DNA of 64,000 bases, taken from assembly GCA_002269645.1 (NCBI GenBank), contig NIVC01001520.1, forward strand, positions 124,001-188,000, written 5' to 3'. Within the stretch, counting starts at the first letter, position 1, and every line of letters starts with the position of its first letter. Under the pieces are notes generated by a model. It was given only the letters and a program-made list of their open reading frames with translations, was not told where the DNA came from and ran no database searches. This document shows, piece by piece, positions 4,732-64,000 of the stretch. The position numbers were made by a program, and so were the translations under genes. Source of the stretch: Macrostomum lignano (Eukaryota).

Positions 4732-7700
4732 ATTTGCACCTTGGTGCAAAGTAAATGCCGCTACCTCCAAGTGGTCAGGGCGGTGAGCCGCGCTTAACTG
4801 CTGCGGCGGCCAACAGCAGCAGGACCAATCGAGGGCAGCGGAGCGAGCGTCGGCGTGTTGAGCGTCGCCGTGAGCGAAATCGGCGCGGTCGGCGACGTGG
4901 TGCTGCTGTGCTGGCCCATACGGATCTTCTGGGTGGCGCCAGGACCGAGAGGCTCATCTACATGTACATCGAGGCCCAGCCGTACCCAGGGCACGTTTCG
5001 GGTCGGGACGCTGAACTGCGGCACGCTCAAGGCCGCCTGGCGGAGAGGAGCTCTGGCAAAACTAGCGCACGACCTAAGCTGTGACGTCATCGCACTGCAG
5101 GGGGTGTCTATCAAGGCTGATCCGGGGCTTCACTGTGAGGATCTGGGCGCCGGATGGACCCTCTACTACACATCGGCGGACCAACGAGGCCGTGGAGGAG
5201 TTGGAGCGCTGGTCGGACTGAGGCTGTAGCCTTAGGCTGAGGCTGTAGACGAGCTGTCGCTGCGTCTCTCTGTCCCCTCGGCTGCTCCGGGTCGACGTTC
5301 GGCTTCGCGGCCGGAACGCTCGTCTGTTCTGCGCGTACGCGCCTCCTGCCACCCGACCTGACGAGGCTCAAGAATTCTTTGAGCAGCTCTCGGTACAGGT
5401 GGAGGCAACGGCGCAGCGTGACACAGTGATAATCCTCGGAGACCTGAACGCGGTTTTGCGTAGGTCCGAGTGGTCACTGTACGTCACACCACGTGAGAAC
5501 GGCAACACAGGAGCGCTGGAGGCTTCCTAGAGAGGCAGGACATGGTGTTGGCCAACACCCGCTTCCGCAAGCCCCCTGGCAGGCTCGCGACCTTCGTGGG
5601 CTGCAAGCGGAGGCGGAGGAATGCGCGCGGCCGGAACGCAACACGGAGGCAGGCACAGCTCTATCATGTGCTGGTACGCTTCCACGAGCGCTGCCGCGTC
5701 GTCAATTGCCGCGCCATCATGCCGCTGGCTCTGCGGTCTGATCATCGACTCCTCGTCTGCGACCTTCTTCTTCGCGATCCGCTTTACCGTCCGCCAAAGC
5801 GGCCACTACCGCGCGCTCAGGGACGCCAACACGCACAGCCGCTTTGCTAGCGCTTTCATCACTGCGCTCGGCGGCAAGCGTGGAGGTGCCGATTACGCGG
5901 AGGTGTGCGCTGCAGTTCGAGCCGCCGCGGAACAAGTAGTCCGGCTGATGCGACCGGCCCAGAAGGAGCAGCCGGTATGGCAAGACGACCCCGCGATTCG
6001 GCTAGCGAGGGAAGAGCTAGAGAGACTCTGTTTGAGCAGGCGACCAACACGCGAGGCAGAGGAGGCCTTGGCGGCTGTCTATCTGCAGCGCCAGCAGGCT
6101 GCTGTTGATTACGCCATACGGGCCGTCTCTGCCGCTGGGCCCGATGCCAGAGGCCGTGTGGCCTGGTTGGCTATCAATGCTCGGTGCATTCCTCTAAACC
6201 TGGCAGGCGACTCTGCGGACGAGCGCAGGAACGAGCTGCGTGAGTTATTCGCTGCCATTGTCAACGCGCCGCCACCGCCGCTGCCAGACAGTCTGACGCT
6301 GCCACCGGAGATGCCGTTGCCGGCAGAGGAGAGCTTCAGCCTAGCACCAGTCAGCACAGCCGACGTTGTGAGGCTCGCCCAACAGTCACCGGGCAGGAAA
6401 GCGCTGGGTCCGGACGAGGTGCCGATAGAGGCGCTGCGCATCCACTGTGTGGCCAGTGAGGTCGCCAGAGTGATGAATCGCGTGCTCTTCGGTGAGGAGG
6501 CACCCAACGAATGGACCACGGCGGACATCGTCGCAGTTCCTAAGAAGCCGGGCACCACGAGGCTTGAAGAGCATCGAGGTATCTGCCTTCAGTCCTGCGC
6601 TGCGAAGCTGTTCAACGGGATGCTGTTATCGCGGTTTCAGCCGGGGTTGGATCCGTACCTGCGTCCTGAGCAGAACGGGTTCCGGCCCCATTGCGGCACA
6701 GTGACGCAGATCCTGGCTCTTCGGTGAGTTATCGAGAAAGCACGGATACGCCAGTCGATCCTGATTGTTATCTTCATAGATTTCAAGAAGGCATTCGACT
6801 CGGTCGTCAGGTCTGTGCTCCCAAAGGTGCTCCGTGCGTACAACGTGTCAGAGCAGCTGATTTCCGCCATCATGGCAATGTACCGTGAGACGAAAGCTGC
6901 TGTTGCAACACCGGACGGCCTATCGGACTTCTTTGAGACATCCTCCGGGGTGCTTCAGGGAGATACGCTTGCGCCGTTCCTGTTCGTTCTGGTGCTTGAC
7001 TGGGTGCTGCAGACCGCTCTTTCTACCAACGACGACGGCTTTCTGTTGCGGCGACGCGTGAGTCGACGTCAACTGGAGAGGCGACTCAGCGTGCTTGGCT
7101 ACGCCGACGACCTAGCCCTGCTGTCCTCAACTGTCAAGGGCGCCCAGCGACAACTGGACAAGCTAGTTGCTGTTGCGGCGAGTGTCGGCCGTCGTGCTGG
7201 GCACCGTCGTGCTCTGCGTGCCGGGCGACATCGAGGCTGTAATTTTATTCCGAGGCGCTGATGGACAGGCGACAGAGCTTCCGCGTTGTCAGCAGTTCGT
7301 CTACCTCGGCGGTCTGGTTCCCGGCGTCCACGAGGATCTGCGGCGTCGCCGCGGGCTTGCCTGGGCTGTCCGAGGCCTTAGCTGACCGCCAGAGGGCGGC
7401 GTTGGTCGAGACCGTCCTGCTGTACAACGCCGAGACATGGACGCTGACCGAGTCGCTCGAGCAGCAAGTTGACGCGGTGCACGCTGGCCTGCTGCGCGCC
7501 GCCTTCAAGATCGGCTACGAGCGAGGGACCAACGCGGCTTTGTATCGCCGCGCCGGCCTGGTCCGTCCAAGCGACCTGTTGCGCCGTCGGCGACTCCAGC
7601 TGGCAGGCCACATCATCCGCGCCGAGTCGTACTGCCCAGATCCGATGCAGGAGGTGCTGCTGCTAACGCTGCAGGCACCCTACTGGCGGGGGCAGGCGCG

Positions 7701-7836
7701 CACTGGGCGTTTCGTCGACTGCCTGCTGGCTGACGCCGGCTCCCCGGATTCGGCCGGCGGCGTGGCGTTCATTCGCGACCTGGCCTTGAAGCGCGCCTGT
7801 GACGCTAAATGCGTATTCTGTTGTTCTGTTGTTTTT
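4732..7836 (+). mobile_element. Non-LTR retrotransposon (RTE-like LINE), APE endonuclease + RT, inactivated by stops/frameshifts
   Basis: APE motifs FRVGTLNCGTL, DVIALQ, IILGDLNA, SDHRLL; RT motifs KALGPDEVP, PEQNGFRP, IDFKKAFDSV, GVLQGDTLAPFLF, YADDL; T-rich simple 3' tail; tatacctaatt at 4721-4731 and 7837-7847 as candidate TSD. Confidence 0.9.
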
Positions 7837-8211
7837 TATACCTAATTGTTGTTCTATAGGCGGCGATCGAGACGGTCTTTACAGCTAACTGCTTTACAGC
7901 GCCGAGACTTGGACGCTAATCGGACAGGTTAAACGTGGCGTACGCGTATTCTATTCGTATTCGGATGTCACAGTTTGTCCTTCAATAGTCTGATTGGGCA
8001 GTAGCTCGTACTCTTTGATAATAAAAGCCAGAAATCTACGTCAATTGCAATACTTGGTAGGGAGCGGCTATTATTTTGATACTACAAACTAGTGAGCATG
8101 CACTCCAAATCAATATTGCAAGCATCTAATGTTGTAATTTTTCGCAAGTGTAATTTTTAAGCTATAGTCCAGTTAAACAACCAATTTAAAGTCAGAAACT
8201 GAAGCCGTGCA

Positions 8212-8709
8212 TCAGCCGGGCCGGCAAAACCCCGCATCTAAAAGAATCAACTCGTAGCGAAAGAAATCTCTTTGAACTATTGTCAGGCCTAGTTTGGCCT
8301 CGAACATTTCGCTGTAATTATCATCCACCTTGAAGCCGGTGACCATATTAAAGATGATCTCACTGCCACCTAGCACGTAGAACTCTTGGCTGCTAGAGAA
8401 CCCTTTGACCCAGCCGCCGTGCACGTGATAATGAGAATTTTTAATGCAGTTCCTGCGGATCATGTCCCAGGAACCTGAGTAGAATATTTCATTAAAGCAT
8501 ATTCTAAGATGATATTCGTTCCATGATTCTTCTTTTATCCAGAGGCGTTGATGCACGACATTCAACCTGCTGCTGCGGTTGCAGCTTCTTATTACGCTAG
8601 AATCGCTCAAGCCGTCGTTCAAGCTGCCTCCGATGCACACTGACACGCAGCAAACAATGCAGCTGGTCGCACAGAGCCATGGCCGGATTCGTCCCAGAGA
8701 CTTGGTTTC
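8212..8709 (-). CDS. Small secreted protein, family paralog A (main coding exon; start exon not identified)
   Basis: Phase-0 acceptor ttctcgggcag|GAA at 8709; hydrophobic leader (WLCATSCIVCCVSVCIGG); FNEIFYSGSWDMIRR, GGWVK and YEL..LDAGFC motifs align with paralogs B and C; stop at 8212-8214. Confidence 0.7.
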   Translation of the reverse strand, partial: ETKSLGRIRPWLCATSCIVCCVSVCIGGSLNDGLSDSSVIRSCNRSSRLNVVHQRLWIKEESWNEYHLRICFNEIFYSGSWDMIRRNCIKNSHYHVHGGWVKGFSSSQEFYVLGGSEIIFNMVTGFKVDDNYSEMFEAKLGLTIVQRDFFRYELILLDAGFCRPG

Positions 8710-8806
8710 CTGCCCGAGAAAGCGTAATGGGGCGGACAGAGAATACAACTTGCCTAATAAATAATATGCTGCGTTCTGTAGTCTTAGTTGTCGCGACCAA
8801 GGACTG

Positions 8807-8942
8807 CTCAAGTAGGACGGAAAACTACGTTTCTTGGAAAACTTTAGGAGGCAGATTTCACCGAGAAAAACGCACTCAAGTAGGACGGAAAACTACGTTT
8901 CTTGGAAAACTTTAGGAGGCAGATTTCACCGAGAAAAACGCA
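8807..8942. repeat. 68-bp tandem duplication (2 copies)
   Basis: ctcaagtaggacggaaaactacg...gagaaaaacgca at 8807 and 8875. Confidence 0.9.
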
Positions 8943-9823
8943 TTACGAAGAAGGGAAATTTTTTTTCGTAACAAAATTGTTACTTTTGATAGAATGGAGG
9001 CCTTGTGTTCAACCTTTAATATGTTTTGCCTTTCTTATGGCTCTATTGATATTCATTCAGATTTTTGTCTAAAAATTATAAAATTTTTAGTTTTTTTGAG
9101 TCTAAAAAGTCTAAAAAAACTTTTGACTAAAATCATAAGGAATAGCACAAATCGACTCATTGTTGGTTTTATGAATCAATTTTATCATTCTTAGCAACTA
9201 ATGACTGTAACAAAATGTATATCAGAATGCTAAAATAGATCCCTAAAGTCAATGAGTCGAGTTTCGACATTTTTATTATTTTTAGGCATTGAGGGCGTGC
9301 TATCCATGGTAAATAATTGACAAGGACTACTAAAGTAAAGGGACTCTCAAACCAATTGTAACAATGAATTAAAGGCCCAAAAGCAACGACAACAACACCC
9401 CCTGGGATTTACTCCCAGCCTGCTGTGTAACCAGCAGGCCCTATCCGGCGCCGCGTCTTTGTCGCGGGGGGGAGGCAACGCCCGTTCTTCGGGCGGCGAA
9501 GAGCGCCGGGAATCGGTCACCGCTCCTGGCTCAGGGGCGGTGAGTGTGGCTCTGTCCGGCCCTCTGTGCTCAGCCTTTGTCGCTGGCTCTGTCAGCGGTA
9601 GGGGTTTGGTACCTGGTCCGGTTATTTCGAGCTCGGTCCGCAGTCAACAACAACGGCAACAACAATGGATGAATAATAGGCGGTTTACTGTTTATTTTGA
9701 AATACTCATCAATACACTTATTCAAAAGTTTGCAAATTGTGCCCGTGAAGCTTAAAGTATCGCTTATGAATTCGTGATAAGTCGGTTATAGCAATAGAAT
9801 TATTACAAGCGATCTTCATCGCC

Positions 9824-10982
9824 TTACCAGGGCGACAGGCTTGTAAAATTCATGCACCAGGAGTCCAGCACAGCCGTGTACTCGTACTCAAGCGGCCCCA
9901 ATGAGAAGATATTTTTGTCAAGCCTCAGATGGCCTGCCATGTTGCCCTGGCTGCCGAGATCATCGTATTCAACGTGAAACTCGCTGCCATCCACCACCCG
10001 GTACTCCGTGCTGTCAACCAGAATGTCAATATGCCCGAATCGCTCACAGCTGCGGCTGCCGTCCAGTCGACGCCAGCGAATCATATCCGTTGAGCCGAGC
10101 CTGAAGAACTCCTTGAATGCCACAGCCGCACTGACGCCACCCCACCAGGGGTTGAGCACCGAGACGCGCTGGTTGGCCAGCTTCCACAGCCGTCGACCGT
10201 CGCAGATGGTCACAGCGGCCAACTGTTTCGGACTGTTGTCGCCGGCATTGGCCAAGACTGCCCAGCTGATGACCAAGTGCAGGCTGCAGATGGACCCGAT
10301 GCTGCAGGCCAGGCGTCGCTGGCGGCAATCGAGTATCGAATGTTTATTTATGCACTTTTATGGGGAGGTGTCAGCGCGTTTTTTGAGCATTTTTTTTTGG
10401 GGGGGGGGTCAACTTAAAAGACGTCGAATAGAAACGTGGAGACATCGCATCGGGGTCTCTTCCATTCTGAAATTCTTCTTCTTCCATTCTGAAGTTAGCA
10501 CAGATGCATTCCCATCTCCTGACACCCTGTTAGCACAGATGCATTCCCATCTCCTGACACCCTGTTAGCACAGATGCATTCCCATCTCCTGACACCCTGT
10601 TAGCACAGATGCATTCCCATCTCCTGACACCCTGTTAGCACAGATGCATTCCCATCTCCTGACACCCTGTTAGCACAGGTGCATTCCCATCTCCTGACAC
10701 TCTGTTAGCACAGGTGCATTCCCATCTCCTGACACCCTGTTAGCACAAGTGTATCTCCATCTCCTGAAACCCTGTTAGCACAGGTGCATTCCCATCTCCT
10801 GACACCCTGTTAGCACAGATGCATTCCCATCTCCTGACACCCTGTTAGCACAGGTGTATCCCCATCTCCTGACACCCTGTTAGCACAGGTGTATCCCCAT
10901 CTCCTGACACCCTGTTAGCACAGGTGTATCTCCATCTCCCTGGCATTCGTGAGACGCAGTCAACAACCAAGCTGCTTACCAT
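9824..10982 (-). CDS. Small secreted protein, family paralog B; exons 10982-10980 (ATG only) and 10318-9824
   Basis: ATG|gtaagc donor at 10979; in-frame acceptor gccgccag|CGA at 10318; gives MRRLACSIGSICSLHLVISWAVLANA (signal-peptide-like) followed by the domain shared with A and C. Confidence 0.8.
10493..10940. repeat. 35-bp minisatellite (~12-13 copies) in the paralog B intron
   Basis: Unit ttagcacagatgcattcccatctcctgacaccctg. Confidence 0.95.
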
Positions 10983-11186
10983 GCAGAGGCTTCGAGTATC
11001 CGAGCACGAAGACGAGCTGTTGTGTTGATAATCGATATGATCGTTCCAGTTGAAAAAACTTGAACGAGAGAATTGAACAAGAGTGCAGAATTTTATGAAC
11101 TTTTCGCTTAGTTTGCTGCTACGTGTATACAGAGTATTTTATTATATAAGTCTACTTGAGCCATAGAGAGGTAACTAATGTTCAAC

Positions 11187-11223
11187 CAAGGACAACTTGA
11201 TAACAGTTATCAAGTTGTCCTTG
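11187..11223. mobile_element. 37-bp hAT-type element consisting only of two TIRs
   Basis: Perfect 18-bp inverted repeat caaggacaacttgataac-a-gttatcaagttgtccttg; perfect 8-bp TSD tgttcaac (11179-11186, 11224-11231); ends match the MITE at 3926-4129. Confidence 0.8.
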
Positions 11224-11909
11224 TGTTCAACTTAAAGCGTAAGTAAAAGTTTATAGTTCATAGCCATCCATTCGGAATATGGTAAATAATTATTTAATTA
11301 GCTAAATGTATTAATCCTAGTTATTACATTAAGTTAATCCCACAAGATACACCCAGAATGCCCAATCAGCTCGCTTATCTGAGTCGCGATGCAACAGTAC
11401 TCGTATGGAACGCAACAGTATTGCGGCGGCAGCCGATGGGAAATAGCAAATGATTGAAGACAAGATCGATCCAAAAAGTAATGAGTTGAAGGAATATATG
11501 AGAGTATTGAACTCGGCGAGCCGGCGTTTTAGAGCAAGGAGTTTTTTGTCCTTGTTGGCAACTCAATGATATGCACGATCGATGTCATTACTACAGAAGT
11601 ATCTAAACTAACATTTGGACACGTCTATAGAAATGCACTTCAGCTCTACTCACAAATCGCTTCACCCCAGGAGTAGCATGTCATGAATATATTTTTTGCC
11701 ACAGGTTTTTTATGCAGAGGGGTCGATTCAGCATTCTGGTGTATTCTGTGGTTAATACTGATTAATAAATCTGGTTAACGCTATACTGATATGTAATGTA
11801 CTAATAGATGTTAGGCTGTTAAAATGTGCAATTCGAGAAATTTAATGTATCTTATGTAGGCCTTGGAGATTCTAGATAGACATTCTCCTCGTTTCAGTTC
11901 GTTATTGAA

Positions 11910-11999
11910 ACGTATCCCACGAATGCAAGGAGCGGAGAATATTGACTAGATTCGCGGAGATTATGAGTATTCTCCGCTCCCTGTATTCGCGGGACACGT
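11910..11999. repeat. Foldback / small MITE-like inverted repeat (32-bp arms)
   Basis: 11910-11941 vs reverse complement of 11968-11999: 28/32 identical. Confidence 0.7.
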
Positions 12000-12531
12000 T
12001 TTGTCTATGGTAGAAGAAAGTGTTCAATCAACCTCACTCTGGCTCAAGGCGTTAATTTTATTGCCTATGGCAGCAGAGGTTACTTAGTGAGAATCTCCGC
12101 CAGAAAAAGCACTAGCGATATAGACAAGGAGTACAGGCAAAGTGGGATACATTTCGACAAACAGCTCGGCTGCTTTAACGGGGGCACATCTTCAACTTCA
12201 AAGCGGCTATATTCTAAACAAGATAACAGAGCAGGTGACAGAACCAACCGAATTGTTGCTGTTGATGTTGTTCCGAACAAACTAAATGCACTGTTGCGCA
12301 ATCCAACGAATTTACCAGAAGGTCGTGGGGTACTCCAATTAACTTCCGCAGGTGTCTGTAACGACAATTTGAAAGCAGCACCATGACGCAACGATAAGGC
12401 ACGTGGTGACAAAGCCGACCGAACTTAGTATATAACAAGTTGTGTCAGGCAGGATAGATAACTACTGTATCAAACCAGTTGTCTTGTGCTCTGTACTGCA
12501 TTTCTCTCAACTTTGAAATCTATCCAGCATC

Positions 12532-14444
12532 ATGGTAAGTTGATTTTATTCAACTTGAACTAAGAAATTGTTCCTGAATTGAATTAAGAATAACCTAAAT
12601 TCACAATATTAGTAATGATATCAACTTCTGAACTTTCTAATTTTGTAAATAAAACAAGAGGTATGTCTTTAAAGGCATATTACGAGTAGATTTTTGGACG
12701 GTGAGCTATTGAAATTGAGCGGTAGAGAAATCATGAAATGCAGTTCACACAACGAGCTGTCTATGGCCAAAACCCAATTAAACAGCCCGTAAATTGCGGT
12801 CAGTTAAAGCAAGGAGTTCCATAATTAGCTGTCGTATTATGAAACTCTTTGGTTAAATCTTTTAACTGCCAAAAATGTATAAACAACAAAAATAGTCTAT
12901 GGTAGCTTCGCCTCCAACTCCTCTTCCCGTCACTCTCAGTCTGTAGCTTAGGTAAAATAGTCTATGGTAGCTTCGCCTCCAACTCCTCTTCCCGTCACTC
13001 TCAGTCTGTAGCTTAGGTAAAATAGTCTATGGTAGCTTCGCCTCCAACTCCTCTTCCCGTCACTCTCAGTCTGTAGCTTAGGTAAAATAGTCTATGGTAG
13101 CTTCGCCTCCACCTCCTCTTCCCGTCACTCTCAGTCTGTAGCTTAGGTAAAATAGTCTATGGTAGCTTCGCCTCCAACTCCTCTTCCCGTCACTCTCAGT
13201 CTGTAGCTTAGGTAAAATAGTCTATGGTAGCTTCGCCTCCAACTCCTCTTCCCGTCACTCTCAGTCTGTAGCTTAGGTAAAATAGTCTATGGTAGCTTCG
13301 CCTCCACCTCCTCTTCCCGTCACTCTCAGTCTGTAGCTTAGGTAAAATAGTCTATGGTAGCTTCGCCTCCAACTCCTCTTCCCGTCACTCTCAGTCTGTA
13401 GCTTAGGTAAAATAGTCTATGGTAGCTTCGCCTCCAACTCCTCTTCCCGTCACTCTCAGTCTGTAGCTTAGGTAAAATAGTCTATGGTAGCTTCGCCTCC
13501 AACTCCTCTTCCCGTCACTCTCAGTCTGTAGCTTAGGTAAAATAGTCTATGGTAGCTTCGCCTCCAACTCCTCTTCCCGTCACTCTCAGTCTGTAGCTTA
13601 GGTAAAATAGTCTATGGTAGCTTCGCCTCCAACTCCTCTTCCCGTCACTCTCAGTCTGTAGCTTAGGTAAAATAGTCTATGGTAGCTTCGCCTCCAACTC
13701 CTCTTCCCGTCACTCTCAGTCTGTAGCTTAGGTAAAATAGTCTATGGTAGCTTCGCCTCCACCTCCTCTTCCCGTCACTCTCAGTCTGTAGCTTAGGTAA
13801 AATAGTCTATGGTAGCTTCGCCTCCACCTCCTCGTCCCCTCACTCTCAATCTGTAGCTTAGGCAAAATAGTCTATGGTAAAATATCATTGATACCCATTC
13901 TTTGCGTGCTTAGATTACTATTATGAGATGAAACCCTATTGATACTACTGAAATAGTACTAAGCCTACGCCTGCATTTTGACAATCCGTAGGCTAAAACC
14001 AACCTCGTACTGGTGCTTCTGGTCGCCTGCCTTCACCTGTGCCTGGTCAGCTCCGCCTCTGCGATCGAATGCAAACAAAACTGGTGGTGGCTCTCCAATC
14101 AGAGCGTCAAAGTCCTTGACCCGTCCAGAGTTGGCGACATTAAAGTGTCCCTGACTTTCAACGAGGTGTACTGGTCGGGCAGCTGGCACCTGGTCCGCTC
14201 GACCAAGCTGAAGCGCAGCAAGTCCACCTGGCAGCGCGGCTGGGTAGAGATCCTGTCCGACACCGCGCACTACAAGGTTATCCAAGACAGCCAGTTCCAA
14301 GTGAAGAAAACCGAGAATGGCATCCTAAAGAGGCAAAAACGCAAGCTGGAAGGCCGCATCCGACTGGGCAAGAATGTCATCGAGGAGCGAGGATTGCGGT
14401 ACGAGTACACCGCTAGGCCGGGTGGGCCCTGCAGGTCCAACTAG
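12532..14444 (+). CDS. Small secreted basic protein, family paralog C; exons 12532-12534 (ATG only) and 13992-14444
   Basis: catcATG|gtaagt donor at 12535; acceptor ccgtag|GCT at 13992; MAKTNLVLVLLVACLHLCLVSSASA signal-peptide-like leader; intact ORF with Cys near both ends of the mature domain. Confidence 0.85.
12891..13880. repeat. 65-bp minisatellite (~15 copies) in the paralog C intron
   Basis: Unit aatagtctatggtagcttcgcctccaactcctcttcccgtcactctcagtctgtagcttaggtaa. Confidence 0.95.
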
Positions 14445-18372: not shown

Positions 18373-18450
18373 TTGCTACACAGATACAGTGCTGGTAGGA
18401 ATACGAGCTAATGCAGCAAATTGCTACACAGATACAGTGCTGGTAGGAAT
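18373..18450. repeat. 48-bp satellite, left remnant flanking the DIRS-like element
   Basis: Same unit as the 22006-22665 array (gctacacagatacagtgctggtaggaatacgagctaatgcagcaaatt). Confidence 0.9.
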
Positions 18451-21400
18451 GCTGGTAGGAGCCGCAGATCTTCCGGCTGCGCCTTGGCCCGGCCGAAGTA
18501 GCGCAGCAGAAACAGCAGCATGTGGCGGGGATGCGTCAGGCAGCGCGACAGCGGGTCGCTCAGCAGCTGCCAGGACCCCGGCATATGGTGAGCTCGAAAC
18601 TGAAAGTCGTGCCTCAGCGCTGCCAGAGTGGCCGTTTTTGAGCAGGGTCATGACGATCGGGTTGCTGGAGGCACCGCGGTTGATGGTGCCGACCGCCGCG
18701 CTGCTGTCGACGTAGCAGGCCACCTTGCCGCCGGCCAGCTGCTCCTGGAACAGAATGATGCCGAGCAGCGGCAGTACCGTCTCCTTGGCGTTGATGTGCT
18801 CGCTCAGGAAGATGCCACCGGCGTCACTGCAGAAGTCGACGAGGCGGAACTCGCGCTGGCCATCAGAGGTGCTCAGGATCATGCCACCGGCACTGACGCA
18901 GGCGTCCGTCTCGACCGCTGCCAGCACTCGTGCACGCCGCCACAGCTTGTCGGTCGGGAACACTGGGATTGCATGCTGCCAGAACTGCAACTGGGCCAGT
19001 AGCTCGCCGCGCACCGGTACTCGATGATGCTGCTCAGGAATAGCGATGGTTATCTCCAGGAGCGCGCGAAGCAGGGCCTTTGCAGGTTTGGCCACTTTGC
19101 AGAACCAGTTCAGTTTGCCGACTAGGTGCTGAAGGCGACGTTTTTGCAGGCTCTTCGAGTTGGCGCAGTCCTGGAGAAGTTCTCGAAGGCCGTCCATCTT
19201 CTTGGCGGGCAGTGACAGCAGGCCAGTCAATGTGTCGATCTGCACACCCAGGAAAGTGACCGAAGTGGCTGGGCTCTGCGTCTTGGCCCAGTTGATCTCA
19301 AAGCCGAGGCGCTGCAGTGTGGCCAGCAGAAAATTGTGCAGCTGCAGGCAGACTTCGTAGCCCTAGGCAGCTATGCAGAAATCGTCGAGGTATGCGATGA
19401 CGACGAATTTGGACAGATGCGAGAATTGCCTGTACATAAAGCGCTTGACAGCTTGCGTTAGGCGGTGGAAAATGTTGACTGATGCCGCCGCACCGAATGG
19501 GAGTCGCGTGTCAACCAGATAAGTGGGCTGACCGTCCAGCTCGAACGTCCACCGGAGCCCCGTCGCCTTATAGCAGTCTGGGTGCACCTGAACACTTCGG
19601 TAGGCGTGGCGTAGGTCGACCTTGCTGATGAACCAGCTTGGTGCCAGCTGCCTGGTGAGATCCTCGACATTGGCAAACTTCATCTTCTGGCGGGGCTTGT
19701 ACAGATCGTTGAGGCTGTTGCCCTGTGGCGCGGACGCGTCGTGAATCAGGCGGATGGCGCCGTCTGCCTTCGGGACGGCGCCCAGTGGGCTGATGATGGT
19801 CGGCCTGGCGATGCCCAAGTCAGTTGCGCTGATGTACCGGCCAGCCACGACCTCCTCTCTGATCTGCAGCTCAACGGCATTCCGATTTGCCTCGCAGCGG
19901 GCGGATGCATGATTTTCGAGCTGGGATTCGCTGGTCGGAGCCGCGTCGGTGATGCGAAAGCCATCGCGAATTCCCGCGATCAGAAACTCCGCGTCCGAGT
20001 CTCCGAGCAGGACTGGTGTCCAAGCAGCAGTTAACAGCGGCCAACGTTTTCGGAGTGCAGCCACCGGGCCGGCAACAGGGCCGGCAGCAGCGCCGGCAGC
20101 AGGACCGGCAGCAGGGCCGGCAGCGGGGCCGGCGGCAGGGCCGGCGGCAGGGCCAGCGGCTGGGCCGGCAGCAGGACCGGCGGCAGGGCCGGCGGCTGGG
20201 CCGGCAGCAGGACCGGCGGCAGGGCCGGCGGCTGGGCCGGCAGCAGGGCCGGCAGCAGGGCCGGCGGCTGGGCCGGCAGCAGGGCCGGCAGCAGGACCGG
20301 CAGCAGGGCCGGCAGCAGGACCGGCAGCAGGGCCGGCAGCAGGGCCGGCAGCAGGGCCGGCAGCAGGGCCGGCAGCAGGGCCGGCAGCAGGACTGGCAGC
20401 AGGGCCGGCAGCAGGACCGGCGGCAGGGCCGGCAGCAGGGCCGGCAGCAGGACCGGCAGCAGGAACGGCAGCAGGGCCGGCAGCAGGACCGGCAGCAGGA
20501 ACGGCAGCAGGACCGGCGGCAGGAACGGCAGCAGGGCCGGCAGCAGGACCGGCAGCAGGAACGGCAGCAGGACCGGCGGCAGGGCCGGCAGCAGGACCGG
20601 CAGCAGGGCCGGCAGCAGGACCGGCGGCAGGGCCGGCAGCAGGGCCGGCAGCAGGACCGGCAGCAGGAACGGCAGCAGGGCCGGCAGCAGGACCGGCAGC
20701 AGGAACGGCAGCAGGGCCGGCAGCAGGGCGAGTGGCATGGCGAGCGGCAGGGCGAGCGGCAGGGCGAGCGGCAGGGCGAGTGGCAGGTCGAGCGGCAAGG
20801 CGAGTGGCAGGGCGAGCGGCAGGGCCAGTGGCAGTGCGAGCAGCTGTCTCGCATGGAATTAAAATTTTGGACTGTCTATCAGACGCCGTCCGCTTAGGGC
20901 TAAAACTGGTGCCGCCGCGACCCGCCTCTTTGCTCAGTTTTTTGATTCGGCAGCCACCGAGCTGTGTTGCAGCTTTGAGTGGCTCCCTTCGCAGATGCGG
21001 CAGATGTGGGCGAAATTGCAGGTGTGTCTGTGACAGCCTTTGTTGCTATTGAACAAGCCGCAGATGACCTGTCCAGCGGATGACAGCTGGCCCCTGCTAC
21101 GGTGACCCTGGACTCCTTGACCGACCGCGACTGGGCCAGCAGCTCGCAGGTTTTTGGGCGCCGTCATATGCTTGATGATGAGGTTCAGATCGGGGCTGTC
21201 CCAGTCGCGCTGTCGCGAGTGCTGCTGCAGCCTCATGTCCTGGTCGTACTGGAGCACCACCTTCCAGTCGTAGCCAGCGTCGAGCAGCTCGCCGATGTGG
21301 ATGTTAAAGTTGAGGTAGGCGTTCAGACTCTTGCAGTCGGGCTGTCCATCCGTACCGGGCGCCACCAGCTGGCCGGTCTCCAGCAGTCGCTGCATGATCC

Positions 21401-22005
21401 GCGCGTTGGCAGCCACCCACTGGCCGAAGTTGACTCCGGACAGGCTCGGCGTTGCGCCCTTCAGAGTCAGGCGACCACGTTCCTGTGTCAGCCATCCTCC
21501 CGACTGCTGCCTCTCGTCCAGAAATTCCGGGATGAGCAGCGCTGATGGGGCCGCTGGGCTCCGGCCGAATCAAACCTCGGTTGTCGGCTCTGGTCCCCGA
21601 ACAGGCTGGCGTAGATGTCCGGCCCTCCTCTGGCCAGCGGGGGCGATGCGGCGCCACTGCGGATCGACTGCACTTCATCCCGCAACTGGGCCTCAGCCTT
21701 CTGCAGTTTAAGCAGCTCGATCCTCTTCTGAGTCTGCCGAATCTGCGCTTCTGTGGCCTCCTCCGCTGGCGCAGCCCGGCGCACGTCATCCTCGTCCTGG
21801 TCGTCGTCACCGTCGTCATTGCCAAAATTACGCCGACTCAGCGGCCGCGACGCGTGACTAAATAGCACAGAGCGGGGGGAGGCTGCCCTAAGCCCTGCAC
21901 GCACGCAGAGCACCAGCACCCCACCAACCCACCAAAGCGAGGCCGGGCCGGCGCGGGGGGGTTTAAAACCAGTTAGAGTCAGATACCTGCCTCAAACTGA
22001 CGTAA
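18451..22005 (-). mobile_element. DIRS1-like retrotransposon, truncated after RNase H (no tyrosine recombinase seen)
   Basis: gag-like ORFs (21919-20934; W+.VLQYDQDMR..QH, Cys/His-rich end); RT (ISPLGAVPK, IRLIHDAS, KVDLRHAY, RLPFGAA, YLDDF) with one in-frame TAG at 19365-19363; RNase H (VETDAC, HINAKE, YVDSSAAV..INRG, then after a frameshift near 18640 FRAHHMPG..SDPLSR). Confidence 0.85.
20065..20830. repeat. 12-bp GC-rich repeat (gggccggcagca) inside the DIRS-like element
   Basis: Frame-preserving array; long ORFs stay open across it on both strands. Confidence 0.95.
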
Positions 22006-24176: not shown

Positions 24177-24800
24177 CTACCAGAACTTGCCTTCAACGCT
24201 ATACCAGAGCTTCCAGTCGGCCGCGGCCTCAAAATTCCTGACGCCCAGGTACTGAGTTCCAGCCAGTCCGCTGCTGTCAGCGAATTCCGCTTCGGCCAAC
24301 GAGCTCCCATTGGCGCCGTCCAGTCGCTGCAGCAGGAAGCCGGCGGTTGCCAGGTTAACAGTCAGCTGAAAGTAGGTGTAACTGGTGGCAGTCAGCTGGA
24401 AGCCGGGTTTCGAGCTGCTCCACAGGGTGTCCATCGGCATCCGCAGTCGCTGCAGCTTGGACTGGCTGTTCCCATCGATGCCCAGCTGCAATTCGTAGGC
24501 GAATTTAAACGCGCTGACGCCGCTGCTGCCGTGAAAGAAGCCGACAACGGCTGTGGAAGCGGCCCGAACGCCGAATTGAATGACCAGGAGCTGCTGAAAG
24601 CCCGGGGCTGACGGAGATGGCGGGCTCAGCTGACGGCAGTTGGCGGAGTACTGACTCATCACCTGCATTACGTTGATTGGCGACTGCGCGGCCTCCAGGT
24701 AGCCGGCAGAGCTCCACACTGGGCAGGCTGGAGGAGGTGACAATGGATTGTACGGGTATTGCCTATATTGACAGACAGACAGACACTTAGACAGACAGAA

Positions 24801-24842
<42 letters not shown>

Positions 24843-24856
24843 ACAGACAGACAGAA

Positions 24857-24922
<66 letters not shown>

Positions 24923-25030
24923 ACAGACAGGCAGATAGACAGACAGGCATACAGAGACAGACAGACAGACAGATAGACAGACAGGCAGACACTAAGACAG
25001 ACAGAAAGGCAGGCAGGCAGGCAGGCAGGC

Positions 25031-27312: not shown

Positions 27313-40638
<13,326 letters not shown>

Positions 40639-41146: not shown

Positions 41147-41500
41147 TTAGAAGTCGGTGAGTCGCTGCGTTGGGTAAGTCTGAAATGAAATGAAAAATCA
41201 AGGCCAGTAATGTATGAATTATTAAATGCATTCAAGAAGTGCCTAGGATTGTTTTCTTAACTCACCAAAATGCTCGGCTCCAATGCATAGCCATACTTAA
41301 TCATCTCGATGGACACGTTGGGCCGAACAAAGACTACAGAGCAGTTGTACGGCGGCTGAAATTATTATTAGGGTTAGGGTTGTAAAATATATACTACAAT
41401 ACCGGACCAAGATAAAATGCATCCTTAATACTAGCTAGTAGTAATGTAGTAGTAGTAGTAGTAGCAGTAGTAGTAGTAGTAGAAGTAGTGGTAATAGTAT

Positions 41501-41551
<51 letters not shown>

Positions 41552-41643
41552 AAGTAGTAGTAGTAGTGGTAATAGTAGTAGTAGTAGTAGTAGCAGTAGT
41601 AGTAGTAGTAGAAGTAGTGGTAATAGTATTAGTAGTAGTATTC

Positions 41644-41703
<60 letters not shown>

Positions 41704-41752
41704 GTATTCGTAGTAGTAGTAGAAGTAGTAGTAGTAGTAGTAGAAGTGGTAA

Positions 41753-41845
<93 letters not shown>

Positions 41846-44832
41846 CAGCAGTCTTAAATGTCTCGTACTAGGAATGCCTATGAATCTATTAACAAAGCGT
41901 GTATGCCTTAATGCGTGTCTGCACATTGCTTGCAATAGTTTGTTTACCTCGTCCAGCAAAGTGCGCACAATTTGCACCGCCTTCGGCTCTGAGCTGTTCG
42001 TCATCAAATCGCAGAAAAAATTGCTAGCCGCCTCGCTCCACTGGCCGTTCGCATCCGTCGGCTTCAAACAGTCCAGATAGGCCAACGCCGTCAACTGACT
42101 GCAGGCGTCGGCAAATTGCCGCTTCAGATAATACAGATCCGTTAGGCTGACAATTTCTGAGCCGCTAGGCGGCTCGTCTAACGGCCGGACTCGAACCCGG
42201 CCGGCCCGGGGAGCGCCGTCGAATCCGAGCGCTTGGACGCGGATTAGTCGGCCATTGGCGCCGCCCAGTCTGGCAGCGCACAGCAGACCGCCTGTGGCTG
42301 CGTGACGACGTGAGATCGGCTGCCAATCAGCGCAAGCTTTCATGTCGGCTTGGAGGCGTCGGCGCTGTTCGTCTAGCCGGCTGCTATGCACAGAGAGCAG
42401 CAGGTCGTCTGGGCAAGTGGCCTTCACGCTCACCTGTGAAGGTAGTGTAATACTGTAATATAGTAGCTATTGTACTTGCAGCCATGCACCTACATGTACA
42501 GGGCTATTGAGACACCTAGTAGGGCGGTTAGACAGCGACTCTGGAGTCTGGTAGATTCTAATGAGTCTGGTGGACTCTGATGAGTCTGGTGGATTCTGAT
42601 GAGGCTGGTCGATTCTGAAGAGTCTGGTAGATTCTAATGAGTCTGGTGGACTCTGATGAGTCTGGTGGATTCTGATGAGTCTGGTGGATTCTGAAGAGGC
42701 TAGTGGATTCTGAAGAGGCTAGTGGATTCTGAAGAGTCTGGTGGATTCTGATGAGTTTGGTGGATTCTGAAGAGTCTGGTGGATTCTGATGAGTTTGGTG
42801 GATTCTGAAGAGTCTGGTGGATTCTGATGAGTTTGGTGGATTCTGAAGAGTCTGGTGGATTCTGATGAGTTTGGTGGATTCTGATGAGTCTGGTAGATTC
42901 TTATGAGTTTGGTGGATTCTGAAGAGTCTGGTGGATTCTGATGAGTCTGGTAGATTTTGATGAGTTTGGTGTATTCTGAAGAGTCTGGTGGATTTGTACG
43001 ATATAGAGTAAAAGCAAGTCCAACTTACCCTGACAGTGCCAGTATTCGGATCGGCATATTCCGCTACAGGCAGCGGCTGCAGCTGGCAGCCAATGGGTAC
43101 ACAGTCGGCCGGAATTCCGTTACTACCACTGTCCCCGTCGCCGTACGTAGACCAGGTGTCGCTCCGATCCAATTCGCTAATGCATGTATTGGTCATGGAC
43201 TTCAGACCAACGGACGAGACGTCGCCGCCGCCGCCAGACGATGAAGACGAGGACAAAGGCGGCAGAGGTGGTGAATACAACTGTAGATTTTGCAAAGGTT
43301 GATGCAGCTCTTGAGGAAGCTTCGGTAGCTGCTCGTCTTCGGGCAGTTGCTGCAGTGGCTGCTGCTTGATACAGTTAGCCGGCAATTCGTTGCTGAAAAG
43401 CATAACGCATCGACTGCCGTCAATTTGACTGTCGAGCCTGACATGAACCTAACGTAAACTCATATCCTTAACCATAACGCTACTAACCTAACCTAAACCC
43501 TATAACCTAAAATCTAAAACGTAGATTTCACACACGATTTTTCCCTAAGTAAAACATAAAAACAAAAAATTTATCTAGGTTGATTCATAATAAAAATTCG
43601 TAATAACAACAATATAATTAATTACACCTGCCCTACTGGGCAGTTTTGCAACAGACAGCTCAGCCCTAGCTAATTCAGGGTGAACTGAAGCAATGCAGAG
43701 TTAAGTGTCTTGCTCAAGGACACAAATTGTTCCAAGTGAGTTGAGAATCGAACCCCCGACCTTTCCTGCGTGAGTCCGACGCTCTGACCACTAGGCCACA
43801 ACCCCTAGCCTATGGGTTTAGTTAAGTAAATAAATAAGGTTAAATACATTAAACGGACTCCTAAATAGCTGTAATTGATGACATTGCCATTGAAATGCTT
43901 TGGGAATCAGGATGCAAAAATGGCACTCGGATTTCTGATGAAAAAATCCGCAGATAATTAAATATGACTCACCTAGCAGGCGGTGCTGGTCGCAGGCTGT
44001 CGGCCAACTGTACCAGCGGACAGGCGCCTAATCGAGGCACCAGTCGCAGTCGCTTCTCCGCCTTTACCATCGCGTCGAAGCTGAGAAATCCCAGCTGCCG
44101 ACAGGGCTCGAAGCCGTACTGGGAGCAATAGGCCTCGGATAGCTGATCCAGTGGCGCCGGGCCGTCAGGCCAGTTGGCCACCATATTGACCAGTTTATCG
44201 GAGTTCGGGTCGGTGACGTACAGGCCAGATTTAGCCGGCATCAGCCTGTGGTCGCCATTAGGCGTCTCAATGATGTCAATGACGCCGCAAGATTGCAGGA
44301 ATCGCATAAATGATAGCATAGAATTGCAGGCAAACTGGTCTAGACGCAGTACAAAACCGTAACGTTGAAAATAAAGCCCGCCAAAGTGACCTAAACTGCA
44401 GCCTTCGCCGTTTTTAGCAAAGAATTCTTCAACTAATTTGGCTATACGATTTCGCACCTGTTGCGGACAGCTGGGATTCCGATTGGCCGACTTTTTTTGA
44501 AAGCTAAAGCGACTTTTACCGCCGCGACAGCTTTTATTTTCTGTGTTAATTTTCTCGATAATGCGTTTGGAAGCATGGTTGGGCGGCTGGGTGCTTTTAG
44601 CGCACATGTTGGCGCCCACTCTGTACATCGTCAGAGTGCCTGGCAGTGCAACTCTGATTAGCTCTTCAACGCTGCTAAAACCGTGTTCACGAAATGGCAC
44701 CGGATGACCCATAGTTCTCTCGTAGGCTTCGGCTAACGATTGAAGAGTCACGTGACTGCCCGACTTGGTTGCCAGGACGTGAATAGAAGCTGAAAATACG
44801 CTTTTGATAACTTCAATGCTTGTAGGAGCCAT
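41147..44832 (-). CDS. LOTUS (x3) + extended Tudor protein, TDRD5/TDRD7 (Tejas/Tapas)-like; exons 44832-43973, 43437-43029, 42433-41948, 41355-41266, 41179-41147 (1878 nt)
   Basis: LOTUS-like YERTMGHPVPFREHGFSSVEELI, YFQRYGFVL..CNSMLSFM, YCSQYGFEPCRQLGFLSFDAMV; eTudor pattern (CAARL..LIRVQ..VRVRPLD..LYYLKRQF..AYLDCLKP..WSEAASNFF..NVSIEMIKYGYA); GT-AG phases consistent, total length divisible by 3. Confidence 0.8.
41440..41848. repeat. (GTA)n microsatellite in TDRD5-like intron 3
   Basis: Direct inspection; the poly-Leu/poly-Val ORFs are artefacts. Confidence 0.95.
42540..42990. repeat. 19-bp minisatellite in TDRD5-like intron 2
   Basis: Unit gattctgatgagtctggtg. Confidence 0.95.
43623..43809 (-). 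mobile_element. tRNA-derived SINE, copy 1
   Basis: Minus-strand A box TGGCCTAGTGG (43798-43788) and B box GGTTCGATTC (43754-43745); body gggtgaactgaagcaatgcagagttaagtgtcttgctcaagg shared with copy 2. Confidence 0.75.
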
Positions 44833-63800: not shown

Positions 63801-64000
63801 TGCTGCCAGTCCAGACGGAGCTGGCCCCAGCGTTCCGCCTGGTGCTCGTTGCCATAGCAATCACCAACGACACCGTTACCTGGGTCTTTCCAGTACTCCG
63901 GCTGCAGGTGTGAGCGCAGATAAGCCTGGTGCCGCTCGGCTTGCATCAGCAATGCCTGCTGTTGCTGCTGTTGTTGCTGCTGCTGCTGCTGCTCCGACGA
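60806..64000 (-). CDS. TUBGCP5: Gamma-tubulin complex component 5 (5'-incomplete); exons >64000-62835, ~62250-61626, 61356-60806 with a frameshift near 61031
   Basis: YLRSHLQPEYW, QAVRETIWMLSG (GCP5-type GRIP1 start), WPLGVVFTETTLRVYSESFRWLLKLRCAK, C-terminal HIEPLVSAM; acceptor of the middle exon uncertain. Confidence 0.8.
62281..62500. repeat. 25-bp minisatellite in a TUBGCP5 intron
   Basis: Unit ctagagaccgattcagaggtcaaat. Confidence 0.95.
62526..62760 (-). mobile_element. tRNA-derived SINE, copy 2 (B-box region deleted)
   Basis: Shares ends (tacacctgccct ... acaacccctagc) and central body with 43623-43809. Confidence 0.7.

What the first reader, a model, noticed from the sequence alone, without database searches (positions are those of the whole stretch)
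8212..14444. Cluster of three divergent paralogous small secreted proteins with no recognisable family
Seen: A, B and C each have a hydrophobic leader and a ~125-aa beta-rich domain bracketed by an N- and a C-terminal Cys, with shared motifs: (W)L.NQ.V, F.E...SGSW.++R (GSTDMIR in B), GW+ (GHI in B), V+.GS/DS.F, G.+RL..N, YE(Y)...C. Divergence is high and charge differs (C very basic, B more acidic); A and B are on the minus strand, C is divergent. I cannot place the domain. Inference: a fast-evolving lineage-specific secreted family (defence, mucus/adhesive or reproductive).
Basis: partly seen in the sequence, partly recalled or inferred. Interest (0 to 1): 0.78.

Follow-up and report, generated by a model that had tools for sequence, protein, structure and literature searches.

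The report
Secreted beta-sandwich protein trio, flatworm
Three neighbouring genes of the flatworm Macrostomum lignano encode small, probably secreted proteins that share a previously undescribed beta-sandwich domain with rare distant relatives in other organisms, and each gene takes its start codon from a tiny upstream exon; what the proteins do is still unknown.

Summary
Three reading frames are significantly similar paralogs: A at 8212-8709 (-), B at 9824-10318 (-) and C at 13992-14444 (+). Each has a hydrophobic leader and a ~125-aa all-beta domain with a Cys at each end. The window is Macrostomum lignano. A and B are NCBI 'hypothetical proteins' Mlig001780g1/g2/g4. C was not found in the protein collections searched.

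No Pfam, NCBIfam, PADLOC or PDB-sequence match exists. The family is not strictly lineage-specific. An exhaustive HMM search of 1.84 billion proteins found a few distant relatives. These are secreted, Cys-bracketed forms in two other unidentified eukaryotes, a well-conserved leaderless, Cys-less ~120-aa form, and one bacterial fusion.

AlphaFold with nine sequences gives a confident nine-strand beta-sandwich (pLDDT 92). Its best PDB matches are C2 domains, but weakly (TM about 0.5), with no profile similarity and no aspartate cluster.

None of the three large exons has its own ATG. A and B share a TATA-driven leader exon that ends exactly in ATG|GTAAG and is spliced to either one. C probably has its own such exon.

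Function is inferred only: extracellular binding modules with diverged loops and charge (pI 5.6, 6.5, 10.2). Moderately interesting: a new domain family and an unusual gene layout.

The parts
8212..8709 (-). Gene A, large terminal exon. It starts right after the acceptor CAG at 8712-8710 and encodes ETKSLGRIRPWLCATSCIVCCVSVCIGG (leader), the beta domain and the stop codon. The full product is M + this exon, 166 aa.
   Evidence: P0122 (PAA53244.1, METKSLG...) and P0131 (leader exon + A). The gene span in L009 runs 10001-12935.
9824..10318 (-). Gene B, large exon. It starts after the acceptor CAG at 10321-10319 and encodes RRLACSIGSICSLHLVISWAVLANA (leader), the domain and the stop codon. The stop codon lies inside a GGTAAGG donor that read-through models use to join B to A.
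   Evidence: P0123 (PAA66926.1) is identical to the window. Fused models P0121, P0129 and P0130.
10980..11111 (-). Leader exon shared by A and B: 5' UTR ending exactly in the start codon (...CTCTGCATG|GTAAGC). The 5' end lies at or beyond 11111.
   Evidence: The 44 N-terminal residues of P0123 and P0131 map here at 100% identity. The donor is shown.
11143..11149 (-). TATA-like element (TATATAA/TTATATA), about 30 nt upstream of the 5' end of the shared leader exon.
   Evidence: Read from the sequence. Its promoter role is inferred.
10319..10979 (-). Intron between the leader exon and B. It holds a 35-bp minisatellite (10494-10939). For the A isoform the intron runs on to 8710.
12429..12534 (+). 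Putative promoter and leader exon of C: TATATAA at 12429-12435, and an exon ending ...CAGCATCATG|GTAAGT at 12534. Predicted only.
   Evidence: This is the only strong ATG|GTAAG donor upstream of C. Sequence. It is 100% conserved in the second genome copy. There is no transcript evidence.
12535..13991 (+). Putative intron of C. It holds a 65-bp minisatellite (12889-13879) and ends in the acceptor TAG at 13989-13991.
13992..14444 (+). Gene C, large exon: AKTNLVLVLLVACLHLCLVSSASA (leader), a 126-aa domain (IEC...PCRSN) and the stop codon. The predicted product is 151 aa. It is absent from the protein collections searched.
   Evidence: It is 100% identical in L009.

Best explanation
This is a small locus of Macrostomum lignano (Mlig001780) with three paralogous genes for small secreted single-domain proteins. 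Each product has a cleavable signal peptide followed by a ~125-aa nine-strand beta-sandwich. The first and last residues of the sandwich are probably tied by a disulfide.

The domain belongs to an undescribed, sparsely distributed family. Its more conserved branch is a leaderless, Cys-less ~120-aa protein. The flatworm branch has been sent into the secretory pathway, stapled by the Cys pair, and has diversified.

The fold is C2-like. The loops that are most conserved in the conserved branch are beta1-2 and beta3-4. By strand alternation they lie at the same end of the sandwich. From textbook knowledge of type II C2 topology, which I did not check here, that is where those domains bind ligand.

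Inferred, not shown: the proteins act outside the cell as binding modules that dock on a surface through these loops. Candidate surfaces are membrane lipid, glycan or another polyanion. The three copies have diverged in those loops and in charge (C pI 10.2, B 5.6, A 6.5), so they probably bind different targets.

Gene layout, shown for A and B and predicted for C: the large exons carry no AUG. A short TATA-driven 5' exon that ends exactly in AUG|GUAAG supplies it. A and B share one such exon and are alternative terminal exons, each encoding a whole protein.
For: Paralogy.

Species and annotation.

Gene structure:
- The leader exon maps at 100% identity.
- It is joined to B in P0123 and to A in P0131 and P0122.
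- The annotated gene span in the second genome copy runs from the ATG exon across B to A.
- Donors fit GT[G/A]AG and the A and B acceptors are CAG, as published for M. lignano cis-splicing (PMC8629364).

Secretion:
- The leaders have a basic n-region, a hydrophobic core and small residues at -3/-1 (ASA|I in C, ANA|G in B).
- The Cys pair is present in all five leader-bearing members (A, B, C, P0124, and P0125 once its exon 1 is added). It is absent from all five leaderless members.

Fold:
- AlphaFold with 9 sequences gives pLDDT 92.4 and pTM 0.84.
- Foldseek best hits are C2 domains: 3w56/3w57 at E 1e-3 and cPLA2 C2. The lower-confidence 3-sequence model also gave mostly C2 domains.
- 3W57 is SmC2P1, a perforin-like C2 domain (PMC10400287).

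Family: outside homologs score E 3.6e-24 down to 3e-5 against 1.84e9 proteins.

Loop conservation.
Against: - No experiment or expression datum was found, so the function is pure inference.
- The C2 resemblance is weak: TM 0.45-0.57, rmsd 5-7 A, E no better than 1e-3.
- There is no profile similarity to C2: Pfam is negative, and hhalign against cPLA2 C2 gives probability 0.07%.
- No aspartate cluster of the kind that binds Ca2+ in classical C2 domains is visible.
- SignalP was not available. The leaders could be membrane anchors.
- C has no transcript or protein record in the collections searched.
- A has lost several family motifs and could be decaying.
- The two genome copies are too alike to show selection: 1-3 synonymous against 2-3 non-synonymous changes, and the flanks near C are also about 99% identical.
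The disulfide and the loop geometry are deduced from strand order only.
Confidence: 0.6

Rival explanations
1. The ORFs are decayed or chance reading frames (pseudogenes) in repeat-rich flatworm DNA, not working genes. On this view the lack of ATG reflects decay.
For: No ORF has an in-frame ATG. A is very divergent and carries extra Cys residues. The locus sits among retroelement fragments and minisatellites. C is not found in the protein collections searched.
Against: All three frames begin in phase 0 directly after an AG acceptor, and an ATG-ending exon with a GTAAG donor lies upstream. Transcript-derived models exist for A and B on three contigs. All three ORFs are intact in a second genome copy. 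The domain folds confidently. It has homologs in other organisms at E down to 4e-24.
Confidence: 0.05
2. The three exons are served by spliced-leader trans-splicing. The 35-nt M. lignano SL ends in AUG and would donate the start codon. B and A would form an operon-like unit resolved by the SL. The cis leader exon would be a minor or artefactual route.
For: The SL is CGGTCTCTTACTGCGAAGACTCAATTTATTGCATG followed by GTAAG (PMC8629364). Spliced to any of the three acceptors it would give exactly the same proteins. About 30% of M. lignano genes are trans-spliced. B-to-A read-through transcripts exist (P0121, P0129, P0130). B and A lie about 1.1 kb apart on one strand.
Against: The annotated models join a genomic exon, not the SL, to both B and A. 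The acceptors GGGCAG (A), CGCCAG (B) and CCGTAG (C) do not fit the published trans-acceptor motif YTNCAG. The published analysis found that trans-spliced genes are mostly conserved or neoblast genes.
Confidence: 0.15
3. The hydrophobic leaders are uncleaved signal anchors, or the proteins stay inside the secretory system (for example in granule or rhabdite content, or in the ER lumen) rather than acting as free extracellular binders.
For: No SignalP run was possible. The leader of A is Cys-rich and has a poor -3/-1 site. The better-conserved relatives are leaderless and so presumably intracellular.
Against: C and B have textbook AxA cleavage sites directly before the first Cys of the domain. 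There is no second hydrophobic segment and no retention motif at the C-terminus. The Cys pair co-occurs with the leader in every case.
Confidence: 0.15
4. They are true, very divergent C2 domains that bind membranes through Ca2+, as the perforin C2 domain and SmC2P1 do.
For: C2 domains are the top Foldseek hits for both models, led by perforin-like SmC2P1 and cPLA2. The conserved loops are beta1-2 and beta3-4. The animal lives in a marine habitat, which would supply Ca2+.
Against: There is no Pfam C2 hit at E <= 10 in 11 family members. hhalign probability is 0.07%. TM is only about 0.5. The loops carry NPxGG and DGHxTxKRGW, not the Asp cluster that coordinates Ca2+ in perforin and SmC2P1.
Confidence: 0.1

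Closest known systems
C2 domains of type II topology (Pfam PF00168; for example SmC2P1 3W56/3W57, cPLA2 C2 1RLW/6IEJ, perforin C2)
   Same: An antiparallel beta-sandwich of about 125 aa. These are the best and most consistent Foldseek hits. The most conserved loops of the family (beta1-2 and beta3-4) lie at one end of the sandwich, where type II C2 domains bind ligand (my own knowledge of C2 topology, not checked here). Perforin-type C2 domains also work outside the cell.
   Different: No sequence or profile similarity. TM is only 0.45-0.57. The model has nine strands, three of them unusually long at 13 residues. There is no Ca2+-binding aspartate cluster. The secreted branch has a terminal disulfide. 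These are free-standing single-domain proteins rather than modules of larger enzymes.
F5/8 type C (discoidin) domain. UniProt's automatic name for one fused B-A model (A0A1I8IDE4) is 'F5/8 type C domain-containing protein'.
   Same: A secreted beta-sandwich bracketed by an N-terminal and a C-terminal Cys that form a disulfide. It has a binding role in other proteins.
   Different: Pfam finds no F5/8 type C match in P0130 or any other member at E <= 1 to 10. No discoidin structure is among the 50 best Foldseek hits. The domain is about 25 residues shorter. The sister isoforms carry unrelated automatic names (DDE Tnp4, protein kinase), so these names look unreliable.
Start-codon donation by the flatworm spliced leader (the M. 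lignano SL ends ...TTGCATG|GTAAG)
   Same: The ORF-bearing exons lack an AUG and receive it from a short upstream exon that ends ...TGCATG|GTAAG (A/B) or ...CATCATG|GTAAG (C). One leader serves two different ORFs.
   Different: Here the leader is encoded in cis, at least 132 nt long, has its own TATA element, and differs in sequence from the SL. The acceptors do not fit the trans-splice motif.
Leaderless ~120-aa members of the same family (P0134, P0138, P0139, P0140) and the bacterial C-terminal fusion (L010)
   Same: They are homologous over the whole domain: the RVxVxNP, GW, V..G(S) and YEY motifs are shared across the family, and the M. lignano copies keep most of them.
   Different: They have no signal peptide and no Cys pair. 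They are much better conserved: 58-77% identity among the four, and 36-43% to the bacterial copy. The bacterial copy follows a Gly/Ala/Trp-rich multi-pass membrane region.

Membership tests
C2 domain (PF00168) | Match to the family profile | tested here: not met
   hmmscan against Pfam at E <= 10 on A, B, C and eight relatives gives no C2 hit.
C2 domain (PF00168) | Eight-strand antiparallel beta-sandwich fold | tested here: inconclusive
   Foldseek puts C2 domains on top for both models, but only at E 1e-3 to 1e-1, TM 0.45-0.57 and rmsd 5-7 A. The model has nine strands.
C2 domain (PF00168) | Cluster of about five Asp residues in the ligand-end loops that bind Ca2+ (classical Ca2+-dependent C2) | tested here: not met
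   By inspection of the alignment with the predicted strands. Loops beta1-2, beta3-4 and beta5-6 read NPxGG / DGHxTxKRGW / xGS in the conserved branch. In C they read DPSRVG / KRSKSTWQRG / QDS.
F5/8 type C / discoidin (PF00754) | Match to the family profile, and discoidin fold | tested here: not met
   No Pfam hit in P0130, P0121, P0129 or any other member. No discoidin domain in the top 50 Foldseek hits.
Classical secreted protein | N-terminal signal peptide with n, h and c regions and small residues at -3/-1 | tested here: met
   By inspection after adding the spliced Met: C is MAKTN-LVLVLLVACLHLCLV-SSASA|IEC; B is MRR-LACSIGSICSLHLVISWAVL-ANA|GDN; A is METKSLGRIRP-WLCATSCIVCCVSVC-IGG|SLN, which is weaker. 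GRAVY 0.9-1.75. No SignalP-type predictor was available.
Classical secreted protein | Protein found outside the cell, with the leader cleaved | not testable with these tools
   Needs proteomics or tagged expression.
The new family itself (M. lignano A/B/C, P0124, P0125, P0127/P0134, P0128, P0138-P0140, L010) | Significant profile match over the whole ~120-aa domain, with the RVxVxNP / GW / YEY motifs | tested here: met
   hmmsearch of 1.84e9 proteins gives P0124 at 3.6e-24, P0125 at 6.6e-7, P0127 at 6.4e-6 and P0128 at 3.1e-5. The second profile search gives 1e-25 to 3e-34 for P0127, P0125 and P0138-P0140. L010 matches by tblastn at 6e-9. Alignment.
SL trans-spliced gene of M. lignano | [quoted passage not shown] | tested here: not met
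   The acceptors are GGGCAG, CGCCAG and CCGTAG, against the published motif. SL-read data could not be consulted.

The most novel reading that the evidence does not exclude
The locus would reveal two undescribed things at once. The first is an ancient but rare beta-sandwich domain family found in a bacterium, a protist transcriptome and animals. It would have a new conserved binding site formed by the loops NPxGG and DGHxTxKRGW. Flatworm-type animals would have moved it into the secretory pathway, stapled it with a terminal disulfide and let it diversify. The second is a 'cis spliced leader': a promoter-proximal exon that contributes nothing but the AUG and is spliced alternatively to two complete, AUG-less ORF cassettes (A or B). 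This copies in cis what the flatworm spliced leader does in trans, and may show how tandem duplicates of SL-type acceptor exons come to share one promoter.
Probability: 0.3. Interest if true: 0.65.

Novelty: new variant of a known kind. Interest (0 to 1): 0.5.

Why it matters
If the reading is right, this is a domain family missing from Pfam and NCBIfam and without a sequence relative of solved structure. AlphaFold folds it confidently. It has both an intracellular-type conserved branch and a secreted, disulfide-stapled, rapidly diverging branch. That gives a clean case for studying how a cytosolic module is recruited to the extracellular space.

For Macrostomum biology, it adds three candidate secreted effectors to a model used for work on adhesion, reproduction and regeneration. 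One of them is not found in the protein collections searched here.

The shared AUG-only leader exon is a compact example of one promoter and start codon serving two whole proteins. It bears on how flatworm genes relate to start-codon donation by the spliced leader. It also warns annotators: ORF finders that require an ATG miss all three genes, and read-through models have produced fused proteins with misleading automatic names.

Tried and rejected
- **Word-indexed protein search with C alone.** No hits, not even a self hit.
- **Library scans.** Pfam on all members, NCBIfam, PADLOC, and a PDB-sequence profile search all found nothing meaningful. The weak Agenet/DUF3471 and ribosomal L21/CD2 hits are noise.
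- **Viral structure library (BFVD).** No match with a sensible TM-score.
- **First AlphaFold run with only the three paralogs.** pLDDT was 63, too weak to use alone.
- **hhalign against cPLA2 C2.** Nothing.
- **Locus scans with the 9- and 7-sequence alignments.** A 4-sequence alignment found one metagenome locus (L010) and nothing in 185,579 prokaryote species genomes. The L010 protein found only its membrane region in an Acaryochloris NACHT protein that lacks the domain.
- **Species identification from the MCM2 exon.** It gave only about 50% identity to many animals and did not name the species. The species came from the cluster look-up instead.
- **Literature.** There is no paper text with Mlig001780 or the six accession numbers. 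There is no mention in the held supplements of four M. lignano expression papers, and a fifth has no supplements held.
- **Selection test between the two genome copies.** Too few differences, and the flanks are equally similar.
- **SL trans-splicing as the main AUG source.** Considered and ranked below cis-splicing.


Full report
**1. What is in the sequence**

The region holds three open reading frames: A (8212-8811, minus strand), B (9824-10276, minus) and C (14013-14444, plus).

- tblastn of each against the whole window finds only the other two. C against B gives E 6e-16, C against A 1e-9, and B against A 3e-4. The next best matches have E > 0.8.
- Alignment gives 22-33% identity with invariant F, E, GS, R, G, V, S, G, L, YE and the two terminal Cys.
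- Mature charge differs as claimed: pI is 6.5 for A, 5.6 for B and 10.2 for C.

**2. Organism and annotation**

An exhaustive HMM search with the three domains against 1.84 billion representative proteins returned eight hits. Seven are credible; P0126, a 471-aa repeat protein that matches only profile positions 11-54 in seven stretches, was set aside as spurious. The three best credible hits are Macrostomum lignano entries.

- P0122 is PAA53244.1, 'hypothetical protein BOX15_Mlig001780g2'.
- P0123 is PAA66926.1 (g1), and P0131 is PAA50997.1 (g4).
- Three UniProt models (P0121, P0129, P0130) fuse B to A.

P0123 is identical to the window's B, including 44 residues of translated 5' UTR. The window is therefore M. 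lignano. C has no counterpart in either protein collection, so it appears unannotated.

The UniProt fused models carry the automatic names 'DDE Tnp4', 'protein kinase' and 'F5/8 type C domain-containing'. Pfam finds none of these domains in them.

The context is ordinary flatworm genome: reverse-transcriptase fragments, MCM2 exons, a LOTUS-domain gene, a GCP5-like gene and many intronic minisatellites.

**3. Gene structure**

None of the three large ORFs has an in-frame ATG. Each frame opens directly after an AG, at 8710 for A, 10319 for B and 13991 for C.

Shown for A and B:
- The N-terminal extension of P0123 and P0131 maps at 100% to 11111-10980 (minus strand). This exon ends ...CTCTGCATG|GTAAGC.
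- In P0123 this exon is joined to B (M-RRLACS...). In P0131 and P0122 it is joined to A (M-ETKSLG...).
- In a second genome copy (L009, NIVC01003110.1) the annotated gene for P0122 runs from the ATG exon across B to the end of A.
- So A and B share one promoter-proximal exon that contributes only the 5' UTR and the AUG. They are alternative terminal exons, and each encodes a complete protein.
- A TATA-like element lies about 30 nt upstream of the exon's 5' end.
- B's stop codon sits inside a GGTAAGG donor. The fused UniProt models use that donor to read through into A in another frame.

Predicted for C:
- The only strong ATG|GTAAG donor upstream is at 12532-12534 (...CAGCATCATG|GTAAGT), about 100 nt after a TATATAA.
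- Splicing it to 13992 gives MAKTNLVLVLLVACLHLCLVSSASA|IEC..., an ideal signal peptide.
- This rests on sequence alone.

Both introns carry a minisatellite.

The layout mirrors the M. lignano spliced leader, which ends ...TTGCATG followed by GTAAG and would give the same proteins (PMC8629364). However, the three acceptors do not fit the published trans-acceptor motif YTNCAG, while donors and acceptors fit the cis motifs. I therefore rank trans-splicing as a possible second route, not the main one.

**4. The protein family**

No library recognises the domain. Pfam at E <= 10 on eleven members, NCBIfam, PADLOC and a PDB-sequence profile search are all negative.

It is nevertheless not confined to M. 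lignano.

- *Secreted branch.* One search found P0124 (E 3.6e-24), an intronless gene on a eukaryotic contig (L012). It has its own ATG, a signal peptide and the Cys pair. One search also found P0125 (E 6.6e-7), on a contig that also carries a Pao-type retrotransposon, suggesting an animal source (L001). The upstream exon of that gene, which I read from the DNA, adds MNTKTVCSFVLVLATTAVVQG|DYVCNGEEWWWLKDQRIK, so it too has a leader and the N-terminal Cys.
- *Leaderless branch.* Searches found ~120-aa proteins without Cys (P0127/P0134, P0128, P0138, P0139, P0140). One is from a marine protist transcriptome project. Others are on AT-rich eukaryotic contigs.
- *Bacterial fusion.* A metagenome scan found the domain as the C-terminal part of a bacterial ORF, after a Gly/Ala/Trp-rich multi-pass membrane region and next to a LexA-type gene (L010). 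The membrane region alone recurs at the end of an Acaryochloris NACHT NTPase that lacks the domain.

- The four leaderless eukaryote proteins with full-length sequence (P0134, P0138-P0140) share 58-77% identity. They are 36-43% identical to the bacterial copy.
- The secreted forms share only 18-42%.
- C is as close to P0124 and P0125 (35%) as to its neighbour B (33%).
- A is the outlier at 22%.

The Cys pair occurs in 5 of 5 leader-bearing members and in 0 of 5 leaderless ones.

**5. Fold**

- With three sequences AlphaFold gave pLDDT 63.
- With nine sequences it gave pLDDT 92.4 and pTM 0.84, with all five models at 88 or above. The model is nine strands and no helix.
- Residue 2 forms a beta bridge and the last strand ends at residue 122.
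- Foldseek against the PDB puts C2 domains first for both models. The hits include 3w56/3w57 (E 1e-3 to 2e-3), cPLA2, PLC and NEDD4-type C2 domains. TM is only 0.45-0.57 and rmsd 5-7 A.
- 3W57 is SmC2P1, the C2 domain structurally closest to that of perforin (PMC10400287).
- hhalign against cPLA2 C2 finds nothing. BFVD gives nothing.

I therefore call the fold C2-like and do not file the family under C2.

**6. How it most likely works**

- *Shown:* three expressed or expressible genes for small proteins with signal-peptide-like leaders and a compact beta-sandwich.
- *Inferred:* they are secreted, stapled by a terminal disulfide, and act as binding modules.

In the conserved branch the best-conserved elements are the beta1-2 loop (NPxGG) and the beta3-4 loop with the following strand (DGHxTxKRG-WRNMFT). 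By strand alternation these lie at the same end of the sandwich. From my own knowledge of type II C2 topology, not checked here, this is the end where such domains bind ligand. There is no Asp cluster, so classical Ca2+ bridging is unlikely.

In the M. lignano copies exactly these loops have diverged. In C they read DPSRVG and KRSKSTWQRG, in B NPWWGG and DGSRSCERFG, and in A EESWNE and KNSHYHVHGG. Net charge ranges from acidic to strongly basic. My best guess is that the three proteins bind different extracellular surfaces. C, with 25 Lys/Arg and exposed Trp, would be suited to anionic membranes or sulfated or acidic glycans. I put about 0.25-0.3 on that specific mechanism and about 0.8 on 'secreted single-domain beta-sandwich of a new family'.

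**7. Selection**

The second genome copy keeps all three ORFs intact: A is 99.2% identical, B 98.6% and C 100%. Flanking non-coding DNA near C is also about 99% identical. The coding differences are 1 synonymous and 2 non-synonymous in A, and 3 and 3 in B. Nothing can be concluded about dN/dS. 'Fast-evolving' rests on paralog divergence and on the loss of motifs that are conserved elsewhere.

**8. Verdict**

Its interpretation is partly right: the proteins are secretory in design and belong to no known family. The family is not lineage-specific, and the proposed roles remain untested.

New findings here are:
- the species and the existing 'hypothetical protein' annotation of A and B;
- C, which I could not find in the protein collections searched;
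- the AUG-only leader exon shared by A and B;
- the wider family with its secreted and leaderless branches;
- a confident C2-like model.

No expression or functional record was found in the literature available.

Noticed in passing
L010 6-1259 (+) (JAAUYH010088552.1) and L011 983-4735 (+) (Acaryochloris sp. MAG, NZ_JANQOP010000164.1): In a bacterial metagenome contig the same beta domain forms the C-terminus of an ORF, cut by the contig end, after a Gly/Ala/Trp-rich multi-pass membrane region. The neighbouring gene has a LexA DNA-binding domain. The membrane region alone matches the tail of a 1250-aa NACHT (STAND) NTPase in Acaryochloris that lacks the domain. The domain may serve as a swappable C-terminal module of such proteins.
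   Followed up: partly
window 9824-9832 (-) and 8620-8709 (-): B's stop codon lies inside a consensus donor (CCCTG|GTAAGG). The public fused models (UniProt A0A1I8JC51, A0A1I8GHZ7, A0A1I8IDE4) splice it to A's acceptor in another frame, and then use a cryptic intron inside A. The 1006-aa model runs on into antisense retroelement sequence. Their automatic names (DDE Tnp4, protein kinase, F5/8 type C) are not reproduced by Pfam.
   Followed up: yes
window 10494-10939 and 12889-13879: The first introns of both the A/B unit and C are each filled by a different minisatellite: 35 bp x 12.7 copies and 65 bp x 15.2 copies. Every 65-bp unit contains ATG|GTAG. Copy number differs in the second genome copy L009.
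   Followed up: partly
window 5621-7845 (+) and 18424-21825 (-): GC-rich (56-69%) retroelement remnants carry RVT_1 reverse-transcriptase fragments. The second one is interrupted by a 12-bp GGGCCGGCAGCA array of about 55 copies. The first lies immediately 3' of gene A and was absorbed in antisense into one public gene model.
   Followed up: partly
window 27313-36203 (-): MCM2 exons (about 50% identical to MCM2 from diverse animals) are separated by introns packed with tandem arrays of 4-, 22-, 33-, 36- and 272-bp units. Several long ORFs in this stretch are just translated repeats.
   Followed up: partly
window 36316-40331: A 4-kb array of a 24-bp unit (166 copies) has extreme GC skew (+0.4 to +0.5). 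It lies between the MCM2 gene and the LOTUS-domain gene.
   Followed up: no
window 41435-44832 (-) and 61554-63952 (-): One gene has an OST-HTH/LOTUS domain (E 3e-19), followed by a possible Tudor-like exon that ends in a Leu-repeat (CTA/TAG array). Another gene is GCP5/Mod21-like (gamma-tubulin complex). These are ordinary neighbours, unrelated to the finding.
   Followed up: partly
L006 1808-2749, 3065-3844, 7844-8809: The contig that carries the leaderless homolog P0138 also holds three paralogous intronless leucine-rich-repeat genes. All begin with MG(S/G)C, a myristoylation-like start. There is also a seven-helix receptor-like gene. The source organism is not identified (Logan SRR28981388).
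   Followed up: no
window 24177-24992 (-): A 271-aa ORF whose C-terminal 190 residues are non-repetitive. It has no Pfam match and was not examined further.
   Followed up: no
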